A DNA stretch of 64,000 nucleotides from the NCBI GenBank assembly GCA_033442325.1, contig JAWQFM010000003.1:2202665-2266664 (forward strand), read 5' to 3'. Below are positions 30,439 to 35,738 of this stretch, piece after piece. A program made the translations under genes and the position numbers. The stretch's first letter is position 1. Every line of letters begins with the position of its first letter. The notes beneath the pieces were generated by a model that saw only the letters and a program-made list of their open reading frames with translations, did not search any database and was not told the origin of the DNA. This DNA comes from Salpingoeca rosetta. Taxonomy: Eukaryota; Protista; Choanoflagellata.

Positions 30439-32109
30439 TGTGTGTCAGGTGTGTGTGTGTGTGTGTGTGTGTCGGTTGTTTGTTCTTGTTGATTGTATGA
30501 CAGAGGCTTTTCGAGGTTGACTACGAGTGGCATCGGCGTCTTTTGCCTCCATTCCTCACGCGCACTCACAAACACAAACATGCATGCACGCACACACCCT
30601 CTGCTCCTTTTGCTGTTGTTGGCATGAACAGGCGCAGCTGCGTGCCCGTGCCATGGCGAGTGTGAGCGTGCCGGTTGCCTTCCACGTGTTTAACAACGGG
30701 CTTGTCATGTGCTCCACCTACTCAAGCAAGGCCAGTCTGGCAGACCTCGTTGCCTCCAACGCAGACAAGGGCGTGGCGTGTGACGAGACGCTTGTCATGT
30801 TCTATGCCATTGAGCTCCTGCGCACCATGGAGGCGCTGCACTCCTGCGGCTTTGTCGCAGGCAACTTCCAACGTGGGTGGTCTTGTGTCATGATGTGTGT
30901 GTGTGTTTGTGTGCTTGTGCTTGTGTGTGTATATGTGTGTTTGCTCTCTGTTTGCGAGTTTCTCCATGCGCGCGTGCATATGTACATGCGTGTGTTTGCT
31001 CTGAGAGCTTGCTTCTCTGTCTGTCTCTCTGTCTGTCTGTCTGTCTGTCTCGGTTTGTTTCACTCCGCAAGCATTGCTCCTGCAATCCACTTGTTGCCCA
31101 CGCGACTTGGCAAGCTCTTGTAACCAACTCACGTGCGTGGATGTGTGCTTGTTTCGCCTTCAGCCGAAAACATTCTCCTCCGCTGCGATCTCTTTGCTCT
31201 CGAGGCCGAAGAGGAGCAGGAGGCGACGGCACCCTGGAACGCACGGGGCGCCAACGGCTGGAAGCACTACGGTGTTGTGCTCACCAACTTTGCCCGCGCT
31301 GCGGACATGCAAGAGTTGCCCAGGCAGACGTTTGAGGACCACCAGCTGCTCGCAAGCCTTGGTCGCACCGCGGGCGCATTTGAGGTGATCGGCACGCATG
31401 ATGACTTGCATGTGTGTGTGTGCGTGTGCGCGTGTTAGCGTGTTACGTGTTAGTGTTGGTGTGTGTGTGTGTGTGTGTGTGTTTCAGTGCGTACTCGTGC
31501 TCGGAACCAAACACAGTTCCACTCCACGGACATGCCTCTCACAACCTCCACACGCACACACACACACACACACACACGCACACATACATACTCAACACGA
31601 TACAACACACCACAGCGGGATTATGTGGACGTGGCGGATGTGCTGCACCAACTGCTGTTTGGATCCGCCCTAGCTGTGGAGCAAGACGCAGACACGAGCC
31701 AATTCAAGCTGCAACAGCCCATCAAGTGCGTGCGCAATACGGCATTTTGTCTTGGCTCAACTTGGATGTGCTTGCTGCACATGCCACGCGTGGCACTCTG
31801 CCCGCTGGTGTTTGCTGTCTTGATTGTGATGTGCTGCGTTTCCTGCCGACTGATGGTGCACAGACCATTCTGCTCATTCTGCTCATTCTGCTCATTTGCT
31901 GTGTGTGTCGTGTTTGGATTGCTTACAGGCCGTATTGGCAACGCGAGTTGTGGCACAACATGTTCACGACGCTGCTGAACAACACCACAGGTTCATGCGA
32001 CCTGAGTTCTCTGCGCCGGGATTTCGAGGGCTACTTGGAGAGCAACAGCTACAAGAGCAGCTCGCTCCATGGCCTGCTCATCCGCCAAGACCTGCAGCTT
32101 TCTGACTGA
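23449..32109 (+). CDS. BUB1: MadBub spindle-checkpoint protein (BUB1/BUBR1/Mad3 family) with a degenerate C-terminal kinase domain
   Basis: KEN1 (WETCKENFKPRRQG); TPR (DPLDIWKRYIAWAE...LLERC...RNDERFLKICLKY); ABBA-KEN-ABBA (LSIYQD, AKENS, LDVYED); GLEBS (EYCFEEMRA); CD1 (PSPTINTKAAMADVMAMF); KARD (LSPILEAS); Bub1-type C-lobe (LVMFYAIELLRTMEALHSC...YWQRELWHNMFTTLLN). Stop TGA at 32107-32109. Confidence 0.92.
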
Positions 32110-32811
32110 AGGCGTGTTGTCCTTGCTGTTGTTGTTGGACTGTTGGCCGGGTGGTTGTGTCTTTGTGTCTTTGGCGTTGCCTCTTGCTGGTGTTTGTTCT
32201 CGTAGCGTTGCCACTTGCTGGCGTTTCTTCTTGTGGCATTGTTTGTTTGTTTGTTTGCTTGCCTACCCATGCGTGCACACATGTATGGCGGCATCATCAT
32301 CTTTGAAGTGGCAGCGTGGCAGCTCCTTGTTGTGTCGTACCATGTCTTGCTTTGTTCCTTCGTGGTGAACATTGCCTCAGTTGTCTTGTTGCTCTTTCAG
32401 AAAACCAAAGGGTCTTTGTGTGTGCGTGTTGCTGCCATTGTTGTTGTGTTTCATAAACGCGCTGTTATATTGCACTGGCACTTAGGCTTGCAAGCGAGCT
32501 CAGCTGCTGTGCCGTAAGTGCTGTGGCGTGGAGGAGAGCAAGCTGCACCGCAGCGGACTCTTGGGTCTCACCAAACCGCTGGAAGGCACTGGTGCGTTCT
32601 GGGCCGCAGCCAGCACGTTCGAGGCGCATTCAGCCCCGAACGAAACAAAGCAACCAGCCAATTTGTGCACACCGAGATGGGGCCGAGTTCATTTTCCAAA
32701 GCTTCATTCTTCTTGCCGCACAAGCAGGCTCTCACTCCAACAACAACCCCCCCCCCCAAGGCGGAACTCCTGCACCTCCACACACACACAAACAGTCACT
32801 CTCCTGGCAAG

Positions 32812-33185
32812 ATGTGCTTCCGGATGACATGCAACAAGTGCAGCAAGCCCACGTGGGGCGGCTGCGGCAGCCACATCGACAGCGCATTGCGTGGTGTTCC
32901 CGTCGAGGAACGCTGCAAGTGCAAACCATACACCAGCAGCGGTATGTGTGTGCTCTGGAGTGAGGGAGCTGTTGTGTTGGGTGGTTGGTGTGTCGGGTGG
33001 TTGGTGTGTGCATCTTGAGGCGTAGTGAGGCGTGGTGTACCTTGTTCGCCGTTGCGTGTGACGTGACGACTTCGTTTCTGCTGTGCTGCAGCCACTTCTG
33101 CTTCACACCCACAACGCCGTGTCGCTCACGATGTTCTCTCCCATGTTCTTCTTCTCTTGCTTGCGTTTATCCAGCGAGGTATTGA
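32812..33185 (+). CDS. Cys/His-rich microprotein copy A, 46 aa, two exons
   Basis: Exon 32812-32941, GTATGT...CCAG intron, exon 33175-33185 give MCFRMTCNKCSKPTWGGCGSHIDSALRGVPVEERCKCKPYTSSARY. Supported by the closely similar tandem paralogue. The second exon is inferred. Confidence 0.75.
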
Positions 33186-33746
33186 TGGCCATCGGGACGT
33201 TGTGAGCCGGCCTCCTGACAGAGGCATGGACACATACAGCTAGCTAGCCACAGCCAAGCAACGAAGAATCAAGAACCATGGACCAAGAAGGCCTCCTGCT
33301 AGCTTCTCGCCGCCCTTTGATCGTATTCCAAGCTCGTTCTACCTTGTCGTTGTTACATTATTCCCCTTGCTTCCATTCCTTTGTATGCCACGGCTCTCTT
33401 TGGCTGTCGCACCACCCTGCCCGGCTTATCTGCACTGTGTGCCACTGCCATAAACGAAAGCAAACCCAAAAACACACAGCGTGAACGAGAAGGCAGGAGA
33501 AGCAAAGCAAAGCATGGAGCGAGTTGTTGCGTTCTGGGAAAACGGCAACAACAGCCATGATGATGCTGATGATGAAAAGAAAAGCCTTGTGCACAACGCA
33601 TTCACCCCACCATCGCAACAACAAGCCACAAGCAAAGCCACAAGCAAAGCCACAAGCAAGCGACGACAGTCCCCTTCTCCCAGGCCCGTTCCCTAACCCC
33701 CTACCCACGCCTCGCCCCGCCTCGCCTCGCATCCCAACCCTCCAGC

Positions 33747-33902
33747 ATGTGCCACAGGACGACGTGCAGCAAATGTCACAAGCCCACCTGGGCAGGTTGT
33801 GGTCGCCACATTGACGCTGCCCTCCGCGGCGTTCCCATGGATGAGCGGTGCAAGTGCAAAGCACACACGGGCACAGCACCTCCCTCATGCAGCATCATGT
33901 AG
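33747..33902 (+). CDS. Cys/His-rich microprotein copy B, 51 aa, intronless, C-terminal CaaX (CSIM)
   Basis: ATG to TAG reads MCHRTTCSKCHKPTWAGCGRHIDAALRGVPMDERCKCKAHTGTAPPSCSIM. All core Cys, His and Trp residues are shared with copy A. Confidence 0.78.
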   Translation: MCHRTTCSKCHKPTWAGCGRHIDAALRGVPMDERCKCKAHTGTAPPSCSIM

Positions 33903-34423
33903 TTGTGTGTGTGTGTGGGTGTGTGTGTCTGGGTGGGTGTGTCGGTTAGCTACACTGGCTTCCTTTTTTGCCTGTGCTGTGATGACGTTCACTGGTCGCT
34001 GCCCACTTCCCATCCCCAAGCTGCTGTTCAACCTCCCCTCTTCCTGATGCACACCCTTGTTTGTCCAAGGATTGACAGCGCTTGCGTCTTCCTCTAACCT
34101 GCGCACCATTCCCCCACCTCCCCAAACATGTGTGGCCGACGACTGCCCGCTGCACCTTGTCAATCGCTTCCCCTGCCGTGCGTGTGGCCCTCTTCCCATA
34201 TAACCCTCCTTCCACCTCGACTGTAGGGTGTTGGCACCCTTCATCACCATGTACCGCTTTGTAATTAAATGACCCCAATGGCAACTCTGCACAATGAGAA
34301 AGAAGCGAGCAACTGCGCACTCAAACGCTATCACAACATGCCATGCATTATGCACAAGACGATTGGATGGAAAGTACATAGATCAACAAGAGAGGAACGA
34401 AAGGGCACAAGGTGTCAGTGTGG

Positions 34424-34715
34424 TTATGACGAGCTTTGTTGAGCGTGTGACTGCTGCCCAATCTCCGCGCGCAGTTTCTTCAGTGCGTTGTCCACCAGTC
34501 TCGCCTTTCGTCTGTCTTCCCCAGACCGAAACAGGCCCTGCCGGCTCGTGTCGTCAAACCTGAAAAGCGAGATGCGCAAGGGGGGCGCGTGAGGTGAGCG
34601 TACGCGGCGATTGGCAGGGGGGGGGGGTTGGCGAAATAGTGTGTGGAGTTCGCTCGCTCGCACGCAAGACAGGCCCACACACACACGCACACACACGCAC
34701 ACACACGCACACGCA

Positions 34716-34794
<79 letters not shown>

Positions 34795-35738
34795 TGGTAC
34801 ACACTTTTCGAGCCACATGAGGACAATGTGAGGCTTGAGGTGCGCGTATGTCTGTGTGCGCTGCTCAGGATCAAGATACACGGCCCAGTCCTCCTTCAAG
34901 AACACATCCACAAGCTAAACAGAGGCAAGCGGCAACCAACGTGAGCAGAAACTCACATCTCCGCGAAAGGTAGGGTAGAGAGCAAAAAAGTATACACCAC
35001 GCACACTATCCGACAAGCAACACTCGTGCTCCCGCATTAGGACCACACACAAACAACACACATCGCCACGTTCACCACACCGTCCTTCCATTGACAACAG
35101 CACCTCGCGAAGAGAGACGAAGAGCCCTTGCAAGAGCTGATCGCCAGCGTCAATCACGGGACACGAGTCCGCATAATCCTCGCACAACTGGTGTATGGTG
35201 TGTGTGTGCGTGCGTGTGTGTGTGTGTGAGGAAAAGGAAGATCGCCCGAGACGAGCACGGTGATTCAGTGTTCCCATCATGTGAGTTGCAATCACGTGAT
35301 GGCGGTGAACGCTGCAGCAACGTACCCGCACGTCGAGCTCAAACGATTTGATGCCGTTGAGATTCACCTTCTTAATCTGTGCGTGTGTGCATGGTACAGA
35401 TGGTTGTGTGCGTGTGTAGTTGCGCGTGGGCTCACATAGCCATATCCGAGTGCGCTCCAATTGCCAGCTTGGCGAAGCAGTCGATGGGTGACACGCGCAC
35501 ACATACGCACTCGCATACAACTCTCACGCAAAAGCACGAACATATACACACGCACTCACACACTCACGCACTCACGCACACACCTCTGGACTTTGGACGA
35601 GTTCCATGAGTTTCGAGCACAGGTGCTTGCACGTCATAAAGTATGCATGCGTCGCCACCTCTTTCTGCAAACCCGACAAGTGTGCAAGTAAACATCACAT
35701 TGTGAGCGAGTGAGCGCGCGCGCGCACACACACACACA

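What the first reader, a model, noticed from the sequence alone, without database searches (positions are those of the whole stretch)
32812..33902. Hidden tandem pair of zinc-finger-like microproteins, one with a CaaX prenylation box
Seen: two short same-strand ORFs about 0.9 kb apart share MC-x-R-x-TC-x-KC-x-KPTW-x-GCG-x-HID-x-ALRGVP-x-[ED]ERCKCK, while their flanks are unrelated and many codons differ synonymously, as expected for a real duplicated gene. Copy A ends TSSARY via a tiny second exon. Copy B is intronless and ends CSIM. Established: CaaX with X=M is a farnesyltransferase substrate. Inference: six Cys plus His could bind one or two metal ions, giving one soluble and one membrane-anchored paralogue of a metal/redox-sensing module. 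From memory, the CxxC...TW-x-GCG-x-H...RC pattern resembles uncharacterised small proteins of fungi and actinobacteria (unverified). Copy B is absent from the ORF track and copy A is buried in a longer spurious ORF, so gene callers would probably miss them.
Basis: partly seen in the sequence, partly recalled or inferred. Interest (0 to 1): 0.82.

Follow-up and report, generated by a model that had tools for sequence, protein, structure and literature searches.

The report
Soluble plus prenylated Cys-rich microprotein pair
Two neighbouring, transcribed mini-genes of the choanoflagellate Salpingoeca rosetta encode about 50-residue cysteine-rich proteins of a widespread family that has no name or described function, and whose bacterial members sit in sulfide/persulfide-detoxification operons, again as one free and one membrane-tagged copy.

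Summary
Copy A (32812-32941 + 33175-33185, 46 aa) and copy B (33747-33902, 51 aa, ends CSIM) are 70% identical. dN/dS is 0.08 and the flanks are unrelated.

Stranded RNA-seq shows two separate + strand transcripts. It confirms the 32941|33175 splice with 146 reads. No reads join either gene to a larger gene.

The genome is Salpingoeca rosetta. Copy A is already annotated as hypothetical protein PTSG_09353, with an N-terminal extension the reads do not support. Copy B appears unannotated.

A profile search found 925 cluster representatives. All start Met-Cys and share C-x4-C-x2-C...G-C-G-x-H...R-C-x-C. They come from green algae, chytrids, ascomycetes, a diatom, a haptophyte, a rotifer, a giant virus and many bacteria. 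There is no Pfam, NCBIfam or PDB relative.

New here:
- In Actinomycetota the gene lies beside CstR-type repressor, rhodanese, CoA-persulfide-reductase-like or persulfide-dioxygenase genes (45/80 loci, and 15/28 loci of an independent sample).
- All 24 two-copy bacterial loci pair a tail-less copy with one carrying a MinD-like membrane-targeting tail. This mirrors A (no anchor) and B (CaaX).
- CaaX-like ends recur in eukaryotic members.

Metal binding, prenylation and a role in reactive-sulfur handling remain inferred. The scan noted this same stretch twice before, not on other DNA.

The parts
32735..33469 (+). Transcript of copy A (about 500 nt after splicing); first AUG is the Met-Cys start
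   Evidence: depth 100-265 with first mates on the - strand (RNA on +). The X6 503-nt contig covers 32735-32940 + 33174-33469. Depth is zero at 32505-32605, so it is separate from the upstream gene; no ATG in 32700-32811.
32812..32941 (+). Copy A coding exon 1 (Met1 to first base of Ala44 codon); holds the whole Cys6His core
   Evidence: identical to residues 71-114 of PTSG_09353.
32942..33174 (+). Copy A intron, GT..AG, 233 nt
   Evidence: table 5: the joint 32940/33174 (cut +1) is seen in 108 reads (X21), 38 reads (X22) and in contigs of X4 and X6.
33175..33185 (+). Copy A coding exon 2: completes Ala44, then Arg, Tyr, TGA stop
   Evidence: translation ends ...TSSARY*.
33616..34220 (+). Transcript of copy B (approximate ends), intronless, about 10-20 times less abundant than A
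   Evidence: depth 6-40 on the same strand. Molecule ends pile up at 33616. Contigs of X4 and X6 cover 33596-34557 without a gap. No joint was reported; no ATG in 33590-33746.
33747..33902 (+). Copy B CDS, 51 aa plus TAG stop
33888..33899 (+). CaaX box Cys48-Ser-Ile-Met51 of copy B
   Evidence: Sequence. Cys at -4 is enriched among relatives. Prenylation machinery genes are present in the genome.

Best explanation
Shown: the two ORFs are a lineage-specific tandem duplicate pair of real, separately transcribed genes under strong purifying selection. They belong to a large, unnamed family found in bacteria, many eukaryotes and a giant virus. Family members are 40-60 residues long and begin at Met-Cys. 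They share the core MC-x4-C-x2-C-x-K-P-T-W-x-G-C-G-x-H-[IV]-[DE]...[VI]-P-x3-R-C-x-C, in which the last Cys is sometimes replaced by G-H. Inferred from the ligand pattern and the AF2 model: a CxxC knuckle in a beta-hairpin plus GCGxH at the start of a helix bind a structural metal, probably zinc. Cys2 (the N-terminal residue once Met is removed), Cys35 and Cys37 would then form a second, exposed thiol site. Inferred from context: in bacteria the gene is part of CstR-type persulfide-responsive operons with rhodanese, CoA-persulfide-reductase-like or persulfide-dioxygenase-rhodanese genes. It often occurs there as a tail-less copy plus a copy with a MinD-like amphipathic membrane-targeting tail. 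The most likely job is therefore thiol-based handling of reactive sulfur (accepting, carrying or sensing sulfane sulfur, or protecting a metal site from sulfide), split between cytosol and membrane. In S. rosetta, copy A (no anchor, highly expressed) would be the soluble form. Copy B (CSIM, expected to be farnesylated, clipped and methylated) would be the membrane form.
For: Gene reality: RNA-seq depth, strand, splice junction and separation from neighbours; dN/dS 0.08; A and B are sisters in a quick tree, SH-aLRT 92. Family: 925 representatives at E<=1e-3 and 126 at E<=1e-10. The Met-Cys start and Cys/His spacing are present in 152/159 retrieved proteins; the seven exceptions are broken by long insertions, several of which look like unspliced introns, are N-terminally truncated, or carry a substitution in the core. 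Named members are all 'hypothetical'. At least 597 bacterial species match. In an even sample, 25 of 300 Actinomycetota species carry the family. Ligand role: C37 alternates with G-H or G-x-H. The model core has pLDDT about 85, with a hairpin at 3-6/13-16 and a helix from 22. Context: 45/80 loci have a CsoR-family repressor (38), rhodanese (36), Pyr_redox_2+rhodanese (27) or MBL+rhodanese (10), mostly directly adjacent on the same strand. An independent sample gave 15/28. The repressors have two Cys and no His at the Y position, which is the x-C-x-C persulfide-sensor signature of PMC8643695. Membrane/soluble split: 60/104 bacterial proteins end in G-F-F-x-R-L-F-G-R-like tails resembling the E. 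coli MinD MTS KGFLKRLFGG. All 24 two-copy loci pair one tailed with one tail-less copy. Cys at -4 is enriched in the top 150 family hits, most of them of unrecorded origin, and absent in 78 bacterial ones. S. rosetta has three prenyltransferase-beta loci and an ICMT-like locus. From general knowledge, CSIM is also the CaaX box of human prelamin A, a proven farnesylation substrate.
Against: There is no biochemical evidence for metal binding, prenylation, membrane binding or sulfur transfer. No translation evidence (Ribo-seq or peptides) was available. No solved structure or known zinc-finger fold matches the model, and the model coordinates could not be inspected for Cys geometry. About half of the bacterial loci, most Acidobacteriota ones included, lack cst-type neighbours, so the family may have a more general role. 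Operon context in bacteria need not carry over to a choanoflagellate. Seven conserved ligands fit neither one nor two canonical four-ligand sites.
Confidence: 0.55

Rival explanations
1. The domain carries an iron-sulfur cluster, or is otherwise an electron-transfer or Fe-S-trafficking module, rather than a zinc-stabilised thiol relay.
For: There are seven conserved Cys/His ligands in 37 residues. One lineage has the domain fused in a continuous ORF to a WD40 protein that looks like CIAO1/Cia1 of the cytosolic Fe-S assembly machinery; the Cia1 assignment is by eye. The sulfide-rich operon context also fits. Weak Pfam 'FeS' and RnfB-type hits occur in a few members.
Against: The fusion is seen in one organism only and could be a gene-call artefact. 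The Fe-S-like family hits are all above E 0.02. The CxxC hairpin plus CxxH helix-start layout is more typical of zinc knuckles. There is no spectroscopic evidence either way.
Confidence: 0.15
2. The invariant Met-Cys start makes these proteins N-degron substrates. After Met removal the N-terminal Cys would be oxidised by a thiol dioxygenase (ADO/PCO type) and arginylated, so that protein level reports O2 or NO.
For: Every retrieved protein that keeps its N-terminus starts Met-Cys; where gene models add upstream residues, the M of MC is still there. From general knowledge, Met-Cys proteins such as plant ERF-VII and animal RGS4/5 are the classic substrates.
Against: The Met-Cys start is equally invariant in bacteria, which lack the Arg/N-degron arginylation branch. 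Cys2 therefore more likely has a structural or chemical role in the domain itself. No ADO/PCO or ATE1 test was done here.
Confidence: 0.08
3. They are metallochaperone or metallothionein-like buffers for Cu(I) or Zn, and the neighbouring CsoR-family repressors are copper sensors.
For: The proteins are Cys-rich and small, and they sit next to PF02583 'metal-sensitive repressor' genes. Weak HMA hits occur in 5 members.
Against: The repressors lack the His of the x-C-H-C copper motif (PMC8643695). The other neighbours are rhodanese, persulfide-reductase and dioxygenase genes. CopA or CopZ were not looked for by name; no other neighbour cluster recurred in more than 5 of the loci. The sequence has a conserved Trp, Lys, Arg and a fixed fold, unlike metallothioneins.
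Confidence: 0.08
4. The ORFs are not translated: the RNAs are non-coding, or the similarity is a duplicated non-coding segment.
For: There is no direct translation evidence. Copy B is short and weakly expressed.
Against: dN/dS is 0.08 with saturated synonymous sites. Hundreds of homologues across domains keep the same frame, start and ligands. The first AUG of each transcript is the Met-Cys start.
Confidence: 0.03

Closest known systems
cst (CstR-regulated) sulfide/persulfide detoxification operons of Gram-positive bacteria (S. aureus cstAB-sqr; E. faecalis cstR-rhdA-coaP-rhdB; S. coelicolor csoR-pdo-tauE-rhod, PMC7533328)
   Same: Bacterial homologues lie inside or directly beside operons with an x-C-x-C CsoR-family repressor, rhodanese, CoADR-rhodanese or MBL-rhodanese genes.
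   Different: The papers read here do not mention a small Cys-rich component. The network analysis in PMC8643695 was seeded with Pfam PF02583, and a gene with no Pfam family may go unlabelled in such analyses (my inference). The S. rosetta genes themselves have no operon context.
CaaX-prenylated proteins (Ras, lamins; human prelamin A also ends CSIM, from general knowledge)
   Same: Copy B ends Cys-Ser-Ile-Met. Distant eukaryotic relatives end CSVM, CNIM, CTVQ, CTIS, CIMA, CVLL.
   Different: The cargo is a 40-residue Cys/His module, not a GTPase or lamin. Prenylation has not been demonstrated.
MinD-type C-terminal amphipathic membrane-targeting sequence (E. coli KGFLKRLFGG, PMC5471200)
   Same: 60/104 bacterial family members end in G-[FL]-[FL]-x-[RK]-[LIM]-F-G-[RK] at the extreme C-terminus, with a comparable or higher hydrophobic moment.
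   Different: This is a resemblance of a 10-residue motif only. There is no homology to MinD and no membrane-binding test. The S. rosetta copies do not carry it.
Treble-clef / zinc-ribbon zinc fingers
   Same: A CxxC knuckle sits between two short strands, and a C-x2-H lies at the start of a helix.
   Different: There is no significant structural match in the PDB by Foldseek or VIA-align. There is no sequence match to any zinc-finger Pfam family below E 0.01. Three further conserved Cys, including the N-terminal one, are not part of that template.
Small sulfur-carrier proteins of sulfur relay systems (TusA, DsrE-type domains of CstA)
   Same: They are small, depend on cysteine and are encoded with rhodaneses in sulfide-responsive operons. 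This resemblance in function is inferred.
   Different: There is no sequence or fold similarity. TusA uses one catalytic Cys in a CPxP motif, whereas this family has six or seven conserved Cys/His.

Membership tests
Unnamed Met-Cys Cys6His microprotein family (defined here by alignment A3) | Protein starts Met-Cys, with the core at the extreme N-terminus | tested here: met
   Both copies start MC. There is no upstream ATG in either 5' UTR. 152/159 relatives share the motif.
Unnamed Met-Cys Cys6His microprotein family (defined here by alignment A3) | Spacing C2-x4-C7-x2-C10-x7-C18-x2-H21-x13-C35-x-C37, with K12, G17, G19, L26, V29 and R34 | tested here: met
   All of these residues are present in A and B. 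Profile scores are 110.9 bits for PTSG_09353 and 114 bits for B against itself.
Unnamed Met-Cys Cys6His microprotein family (defined here by alignment A3) | Small size (about 37-120 aa) with a variable C-terminal tail | tested here: met
   A is 46 aa and B is 51 aa.
CaaX farnesylated proteins (copy B only) | Cys at -4, aliphatic a2, X = Met/Ser/Gln/Ala for farnesyltransferase | tested here: met
   Copy B ends C-S-I-M. Copy A ends SARY, so it does not meet the feature.
CaaX farnesylated proteins (copy B only) | Host encodes prenyltransferase and CaaX-processing enzymes | tested here: met
   PF00432 matches at three loci, all above cut-off. An ICMT-like locus scores just above cut-off. Rce1 or Ste24 was not searched.
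CaaX farnesylated proteins (copy B only) | Covalent isoprenoid on the Cys, and membrane localisation | not testable with these tools
   This needs metabolic labelling, mass spectrometry or imaging.
Zinc fingers of treble-clef / zinc-ribbon type | Fold similarity to solved zinc fingers | tested here: not met
   Foldseek against the PDB gave a best E of 4.8. VIA-align over 48,161 chains gave no Z >= 2. The model is short and of moderate confidence, so this is weak negative evidence.
Zinc fingers of treble-clef / zinc-ribbon type | Stoichiometric zinc bound by four Cys/His | not testable with these tools
   Only the ligand pattern and the Cys-to-His swaps at position 37 are seen.
CstR-regulon (cst-like) operon components | Encoded in an operon with an x-C-x-C CsoR-family repressor and sulfurtransferase, persulfide reductase or dioxygenase genes | tested here: inconclusive
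   The feature is met for about half of the actinobacterial homologues. It cannot apply to the eukaryotic S. rosetta genes. Sulfide induction was not tested.
Metallothioneins | Very high Cys content in C-C, C-x-C clusters, few aromatic residues, no fixed fold without metal | tested here: not met
   Cys makes up 7/51 residues. There is a conserved Trp, and the positions and spacing are fixed with predicted secondary structure.
Cys2 N-degron substrates | N-terminal Cys exposed after Met removal and oxidised/arginylated | not tested
   Only the Met-Cys start is shown. The same start in bacteria argues for another reason.

The most novel reading that the evidence does not exclude
The family is an ancient two-part thiol relay for reactive sulfur species. 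It would be conserved from Actinomycetota to eukaryotes and giant viruses. A membrane-tethered copy (MinD-like helix in bacteria, farnesyl-Cys in eukaryotes) would pick up sulfane sulfur at the membrane, where sulfide:quinone oxidoreductase acts. It would pass the sulfur, using the free N-terminal cysteine, to a soluble copy that feeds rhodanese, persulfide reductase or dioxygenase. The S. rosetta A/B pair would be the first eukaryotic example of this division of labour.
Probability: 0.25. Interest if true: 0.85.

Novelty: new variant of a known kind. Interest (0 to 1): 0.62.

Why it matters
Hydrogen sulfide and persulfide signalling and detoxification are active fields, and the bacterial cst and related operons are considered well inventoried. 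This work points to a conserved component that has no Pfam or NCBIfam family. It is present in roughly 8% of sampled actinobacterial species and in many eukaryotic lineages, which would add an untested player to these pathways.

The repeated, independently evolved pairing of a free copy with a membrane-targeted copy gives a concrete, testable hypothesis about where the protein acts. The membrane tag is an amphipathic helix in bacteria and a CaaX box in eukaryotes.

For S. rosetta it yields a corrected gene model for PTSG_09353 and one new gene. The invariant N-terminal cysteine is a chemically unusual feature that deserves structural study.

Tried and rejected
- Pfam and NCBIfam scans of both copies and of 130 relatives gave no consistent family.
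- The word-index protein search with copy B found nothing.
- The ESM Atlas feature search returned only unnamed clusters.
- The PDB sequence profile search gave only a chance hit at E 0.53.
- Foldseek against the PDB and VIA-align wide gave no fold match.
- The Atlas fold search returned same-family actinobacterial clusters plus one thioredoxin-domain cluster at TM 0.59, which I did not interpret.
A 12-row alignment worked.
It gives no verdict and is no evidence.
- SCO0619 of S. coelicolor, which I suspected to be a homologue between csoR and pdo, is TauE instead.
- Literature searches for PTSG_09353 and for a small Cys-rich cst-operon protein found nothing.
- 'Exons of a larger gene' is rejected. 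Depth is zero between the upstream gene and copy A, there are no joints into either ORF, and the annotated N-terminal extension of PTSG_09353 has no read support.
- 'Copper CsoR context' is rejected on the x-C-x-C motif and the sulfur-enzyme neighbours.
- The careful ML tree did not finish, so only the quick tree is cited.
Full report
**1. What is in the sequence**

The window region 32500-34300 holds two short + strand ORFs.

- Copy A starts at ATG 32812 and runs to 32941. There a GT begins a 233-nt intron ending in AG at 33174.
- Copy A's second exon (33175-33185) supplies the rest of Ala44, then Arg, Tyr and TGA. This gives a 46-residue protein ending TSSARY.
- Copy B is an uninterrupted ORF at 33747-33902, 51 residues, ending CSIM.
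- The two proteins are 30/43 identical (E 5e-24).
- At the DNA level the similarity is limited to the coding part (71% identity). The 100 nt upstream are 30% identical, which is the random level.
- Over the 43 shared codons pS is 0.72 (saturated) and pN is 0.175, so dN/dS is 0.08 (Fisher p 1.6e-7). This is an old duplication kept under strong purifying selection.
- A six-frame search of the whole 55.4-Mb assembly finds only these two copies.

**2. Whether they are expressed, and whether they are separate genes**

One read-laying run on window 32000-35000 used two stranded raw-read RNA runs and two assembled runs. It gave the following picture.

- Copy A is covered at depth 100-265, almost only by pairs whose first mate lies on the - strand, so the RNA is on the + strand.
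- The joint 32940/33174 (GT..AG, cut +1) is seen in 108 and 38 reads and in contigs of two further runs.
- A 503-nt contig (32735-32940 + 33174-33469) gives the approximate mRNA.
- Depth is zero at 32505-32605, between the 3' end of the upstream gene (about 32460) and copy A.
- No joint or loose end links upstream sequence to the ORF.
- Copy B is covered at depth 6-40 on the same strand from about 33616 to about 34220. Contigs run through the ORF without a gap and no joint is reported.
- The gap between A and B (33515-33615) has depth 0.3-3.4, so B has its own start, with perhaps a little read-through from A.
- From about 34222 a convergent gene on the - strand takes over.
- Neither 5' UTR has an upstream ATG.

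Translation itself was not testable.

**3. Whose genome, and whether the genes are 'hidden'**

The best hit of the profile search (P0001, 116 aa) is Salpingoeca rosetta hypothetical protein PTSG_09353 / XP_004989610.1.

- Its last 46 residues are copy A, including TSSARY.
- Its first 70 residues come from upstream exons that have no read support. They also conflict with the family-wide N-terminal Met-Cys. I consider that extension spurious.
- Copy B shares no 5-residue words with any 28-89-aa protein in the 5.8-billion-cluster collection, and no second S. rosetta protein appears in the profile hits. It appears to be unannotated.

**4. The family**

A two-sequence profile searched against 1.84 billion representatives gave 925 proteins at E <= 1e-3 and 126 at E <= 1e-10.

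- Of the 159 retrieved sequences, 152 carry MC-x4-C-x2-C-x7-C-x2-3-H.
- The seven exceptions are broken by long insertions, several of which look like unspliced introns (often just after 'HID/ES'), are N-terminally truncated, or carry a substitution in the core.
- Where a gene model adds residues upstream, the Met of Met-Cys is still there. The true start is therefore Met-Cys throughout.
- A 130-row alignment (A3) has M1, C2, C7, C10, G17, C18, G19, H21 and C35 invariant. K12, L26, V29 and R34 are at least 90% conserved. These rows were chosen with a spacing pattern, so one search is the less biased figure.
- The last Cys (C37) alternates with G-H or G-x-H, as expected for a metal ligand.
- Named members are all 'hypothetical' or 'uncharacterized'. 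They are Tetrabaena socialis, Chlamydomonas sp. UWO241, the chytrids Obelidium mucronatum and Cladochytrium replicatum, Colletotrichum navitas, Pavlovales sp., Attheya sp., the rotifer Adineta ricciae and Yasminevirus.
- One peptide pattern alone matched at least 597 bacterial species genomes. These were mostly Actinomycetota (Microbacterium, Leucobacter, Agrococcus, Tessaracoccus, Arachnia, Buchananella, Propionibacteriaceae), plus Acidobacteriota, Myxococcota and Gemmatimonadota.
- In an even sample of 300 Actinomycetota species, 25 carried the family.
- No Pfam or NCBIfam model and no PDB sequence matches.

**5. Structure**

AlphaFold2 with the 130-row alignment gives mean pLDDT 75.5, about 85 over residues 1-30.

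- It predicts a hairpin (strands 3-6 and 13-16) that places C7 and C10 in the turn.
- A short helix starts right after C18-G-x-H21.
- This layout resembles a zinc knuckle plus helix-start ligand pair, but no solved structure matches.
- The ESM Atlas shape search returns only same-family actinobacterial clusters.

**6. Bacterial gene context, the main new lead**

I clustered the ORFs in 80 bacterial loci and named the recurrent neighbours with Pfam. They are:

- a 95-aa PF02583 CsoR-family repressor;
- a 129-aa rhodanese;
- a roughly 550-aa Pyr_redox_2 + Pyr_redox_dim + rhodanese protein, the architecture of CoA-disulfide/persulfide reductases;
- a roughly 470-aa metallo-beta-lactamase + rhodanese protein, the architecture of CstB-type persulfide dioxygenases.

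By tblastn, 45 of 80 loci have at least one of these within 5 kb (repressor 38, rhodanese 36, reductase 27, dioxygenase 10). They are usually 2-100 bp away on the same strand.

In the independent even sample, 15 of 28 loci have them within 1.5 kb.

The repressors have two Cys and no His four residues before the second Cys. This is the x-C-x-C signature that PMC8643695 assigns to persulfide-sensing CstR, as opposed to x-C-H-C copper sensors.

Described operons of this type, for example in S. coelicolor (PMC7533328), do not mention such a small gene. The network analysis in PMC8643695 was seeded with Pfam PF02583, and a gene with no Pfam family may go unlabelled in such analyses (my inference). 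Most Acidobacteriota loci lack this context.

**7. A recurring pair of a free and a membrane-tagged copy**

- Of 104 bacterial proteins in the 80 loci, 60 end in a motif like G-G-F-F-[AS]-R-L-F-G-R at the very C-terminus (median length 55). The rest stop just after R-C-x-C (median 39).
- The motif closely resembles the E. coli MinD membrane-targeting sequence KGFLKRLFGG (PMC5471200). Its helical hydrophobic moment is similar or higher.
- Twenty-four loci carry two copies, and all 24 pair one tailed copy with one tail-less copy.
- Other members in the profile hits end in predicted transmembrane tails.
- Among the top hits, Cys sits at position -4 from the end in 9 of 105 proteins, against at most 2 at neighbouring positions and a 1.4% Cys background (p 1.8e-5). 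It does so in 0 of 78 bacterial proteins.
- Examples are CSVM, CNIM (Obelidium), CTVQ (Pavlovales), CTIS (Attheya), CIMA and CVLL.
- S. rosetta has three prenyltransferase-beta-type loci and an ICMT-like locus.
- From general knowledge, CaaX with X = Met is a farnesyltransferase signal, and CSIM is the box of human prelamin A.
- In a quick ML tree, A and B are sisters (SH-aLRT 92). They sit inside a 19-row clade (SH-aLRT 95) that holds the green-algal members and most of the CaaX-like ends.
- The simplest reading is that B keeps the ancestral anchor and that A lost it, with its tiny second exon. A is also on the longer branch and is the more highly expressed copy.

**8. Mechanism, with shown and inferred steps marked**

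Shown:
- two expressed, selected paralogues of a pan-domain family;
- a conserved Met-Cys start and Cys6His pattern;
- bacterial linkage to CstR-type sulfur operons;
- a tail dichotomy.

Inferred:
- One set of ligands (C7, C10, C18, H21) holds zinc.
- C2, C35 and C37 form a reactive or second-metal site.
- The protein handles sulfane sulfur, or senses or protects against sulfide.
- The tailed or CaaX copy works at the membrane and the bare copy in the cytosol.

Rivals are an Fe-S cluster role, N-degron oxygen sensing, and copper/zinc buffering. The Fe-S idea draws on one fusion to a WD40 protein that looks like CIAO1. The N-degron idea is weakened by the same start in bacteria. The metal-buffering idea is contradicted by the repressor motif and the neighbours.

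**9. Verdict**

These are not unique hidden genes. They are S. rosetta's two members of a large family that has no model in Pfam or NCBIfam, and the bacterial context points to reactive-sulfur biology. The soluble/anchored split recurs independently. Function remains untested.

The earlier scan notes on this place (s1-438706, s1-434648) are the same stretch read again. They agree with the observation and add nothing independent.

Noticed in passing
window 32215-32811 (annotated upstream exons of PTSG_09353): The 70-residue N-terminal extension of the annotated 116-aa PTSG_09353 has no RNA-seq support. Depth is zero at 32505-32605 and there are no joints into 32797. UniRef's name 'Secreted protein' for it may stem from this extension (my guess).
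   Followed up: partly
window 32737-32757: The poly-C tract in the 5' UTR of copy A varies in length. One C is missing in 23/90 and 5/34 reads, and G/C-rich loose ends occur at 32757. This may be sequencing slippage or heterogeneity.
   Followed up: no
window 34024: A C>G difference in the 3' UTR of copy B appears in 2/30 and 5/43 RNA reads. It could be an allele, a strain difference or an error.
   Followed up: no
window 34222-34928, - strand: A convergent gene on the - strand abuts the 3' end of copy B's transcript. Contigs skip 34558-34802 (a CA-repeat region, probably an intron) and splice onward from 34916 to sequence outside the stretch.
   Followed up: no
L006:1479-2798 (Logan contigs, 9 samples of one study): A continuous 439-aa ORF fuses the Met-Cys domain to a WD40 propeller that looks like CIAO1/Cia1 of cytosolic Fe-S assembly. 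It is either a true fusion or a gene-call artefact in an unknown eukaryote.
   Followed up: partly
L010:4789-5114, L029:4805-5129, L069:5001-7614 and 21 other loci: Bacterial operons carry two paralogues. In Microbacteriaceae the tailed copy also has a distinct core variant (…V-P-x3-W-C-x-G-x-H…) and lies directly upstream of the short copy.
   Followed up: yes
P0073 (Yasminevirus sp. GU-2018, VBB17685.1) and P0077 (Adineta ricciae): Family members occur in a giant virus and in a bdelloid rotifer, so horizontal transfer may have shaped the patchy eukaryotic distribution. No other animal or choanoflagellate member turned up among the 150 best hits.
   Followed up: no
L003:3550-7679 (Acidobacteria-like metagenome contigs); P0166: Outside Actinomycetota the gene sits between Aminotran_5, a PF04199 cyclase/kynurenine-formamidase-like gene and an Amidohydro_1 gene. 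One cluster member (P0166) is called as a fusion with the amidohydrolase.
   Followed up: partly
fold search, row 4: An ESM Atlas cluster of 101-aa thioredoxin-domain proteins aligns to model residues 1-43 at TM 0.59. This may be chance, or a hint of a thiol-redox relative.
   Followed up: no
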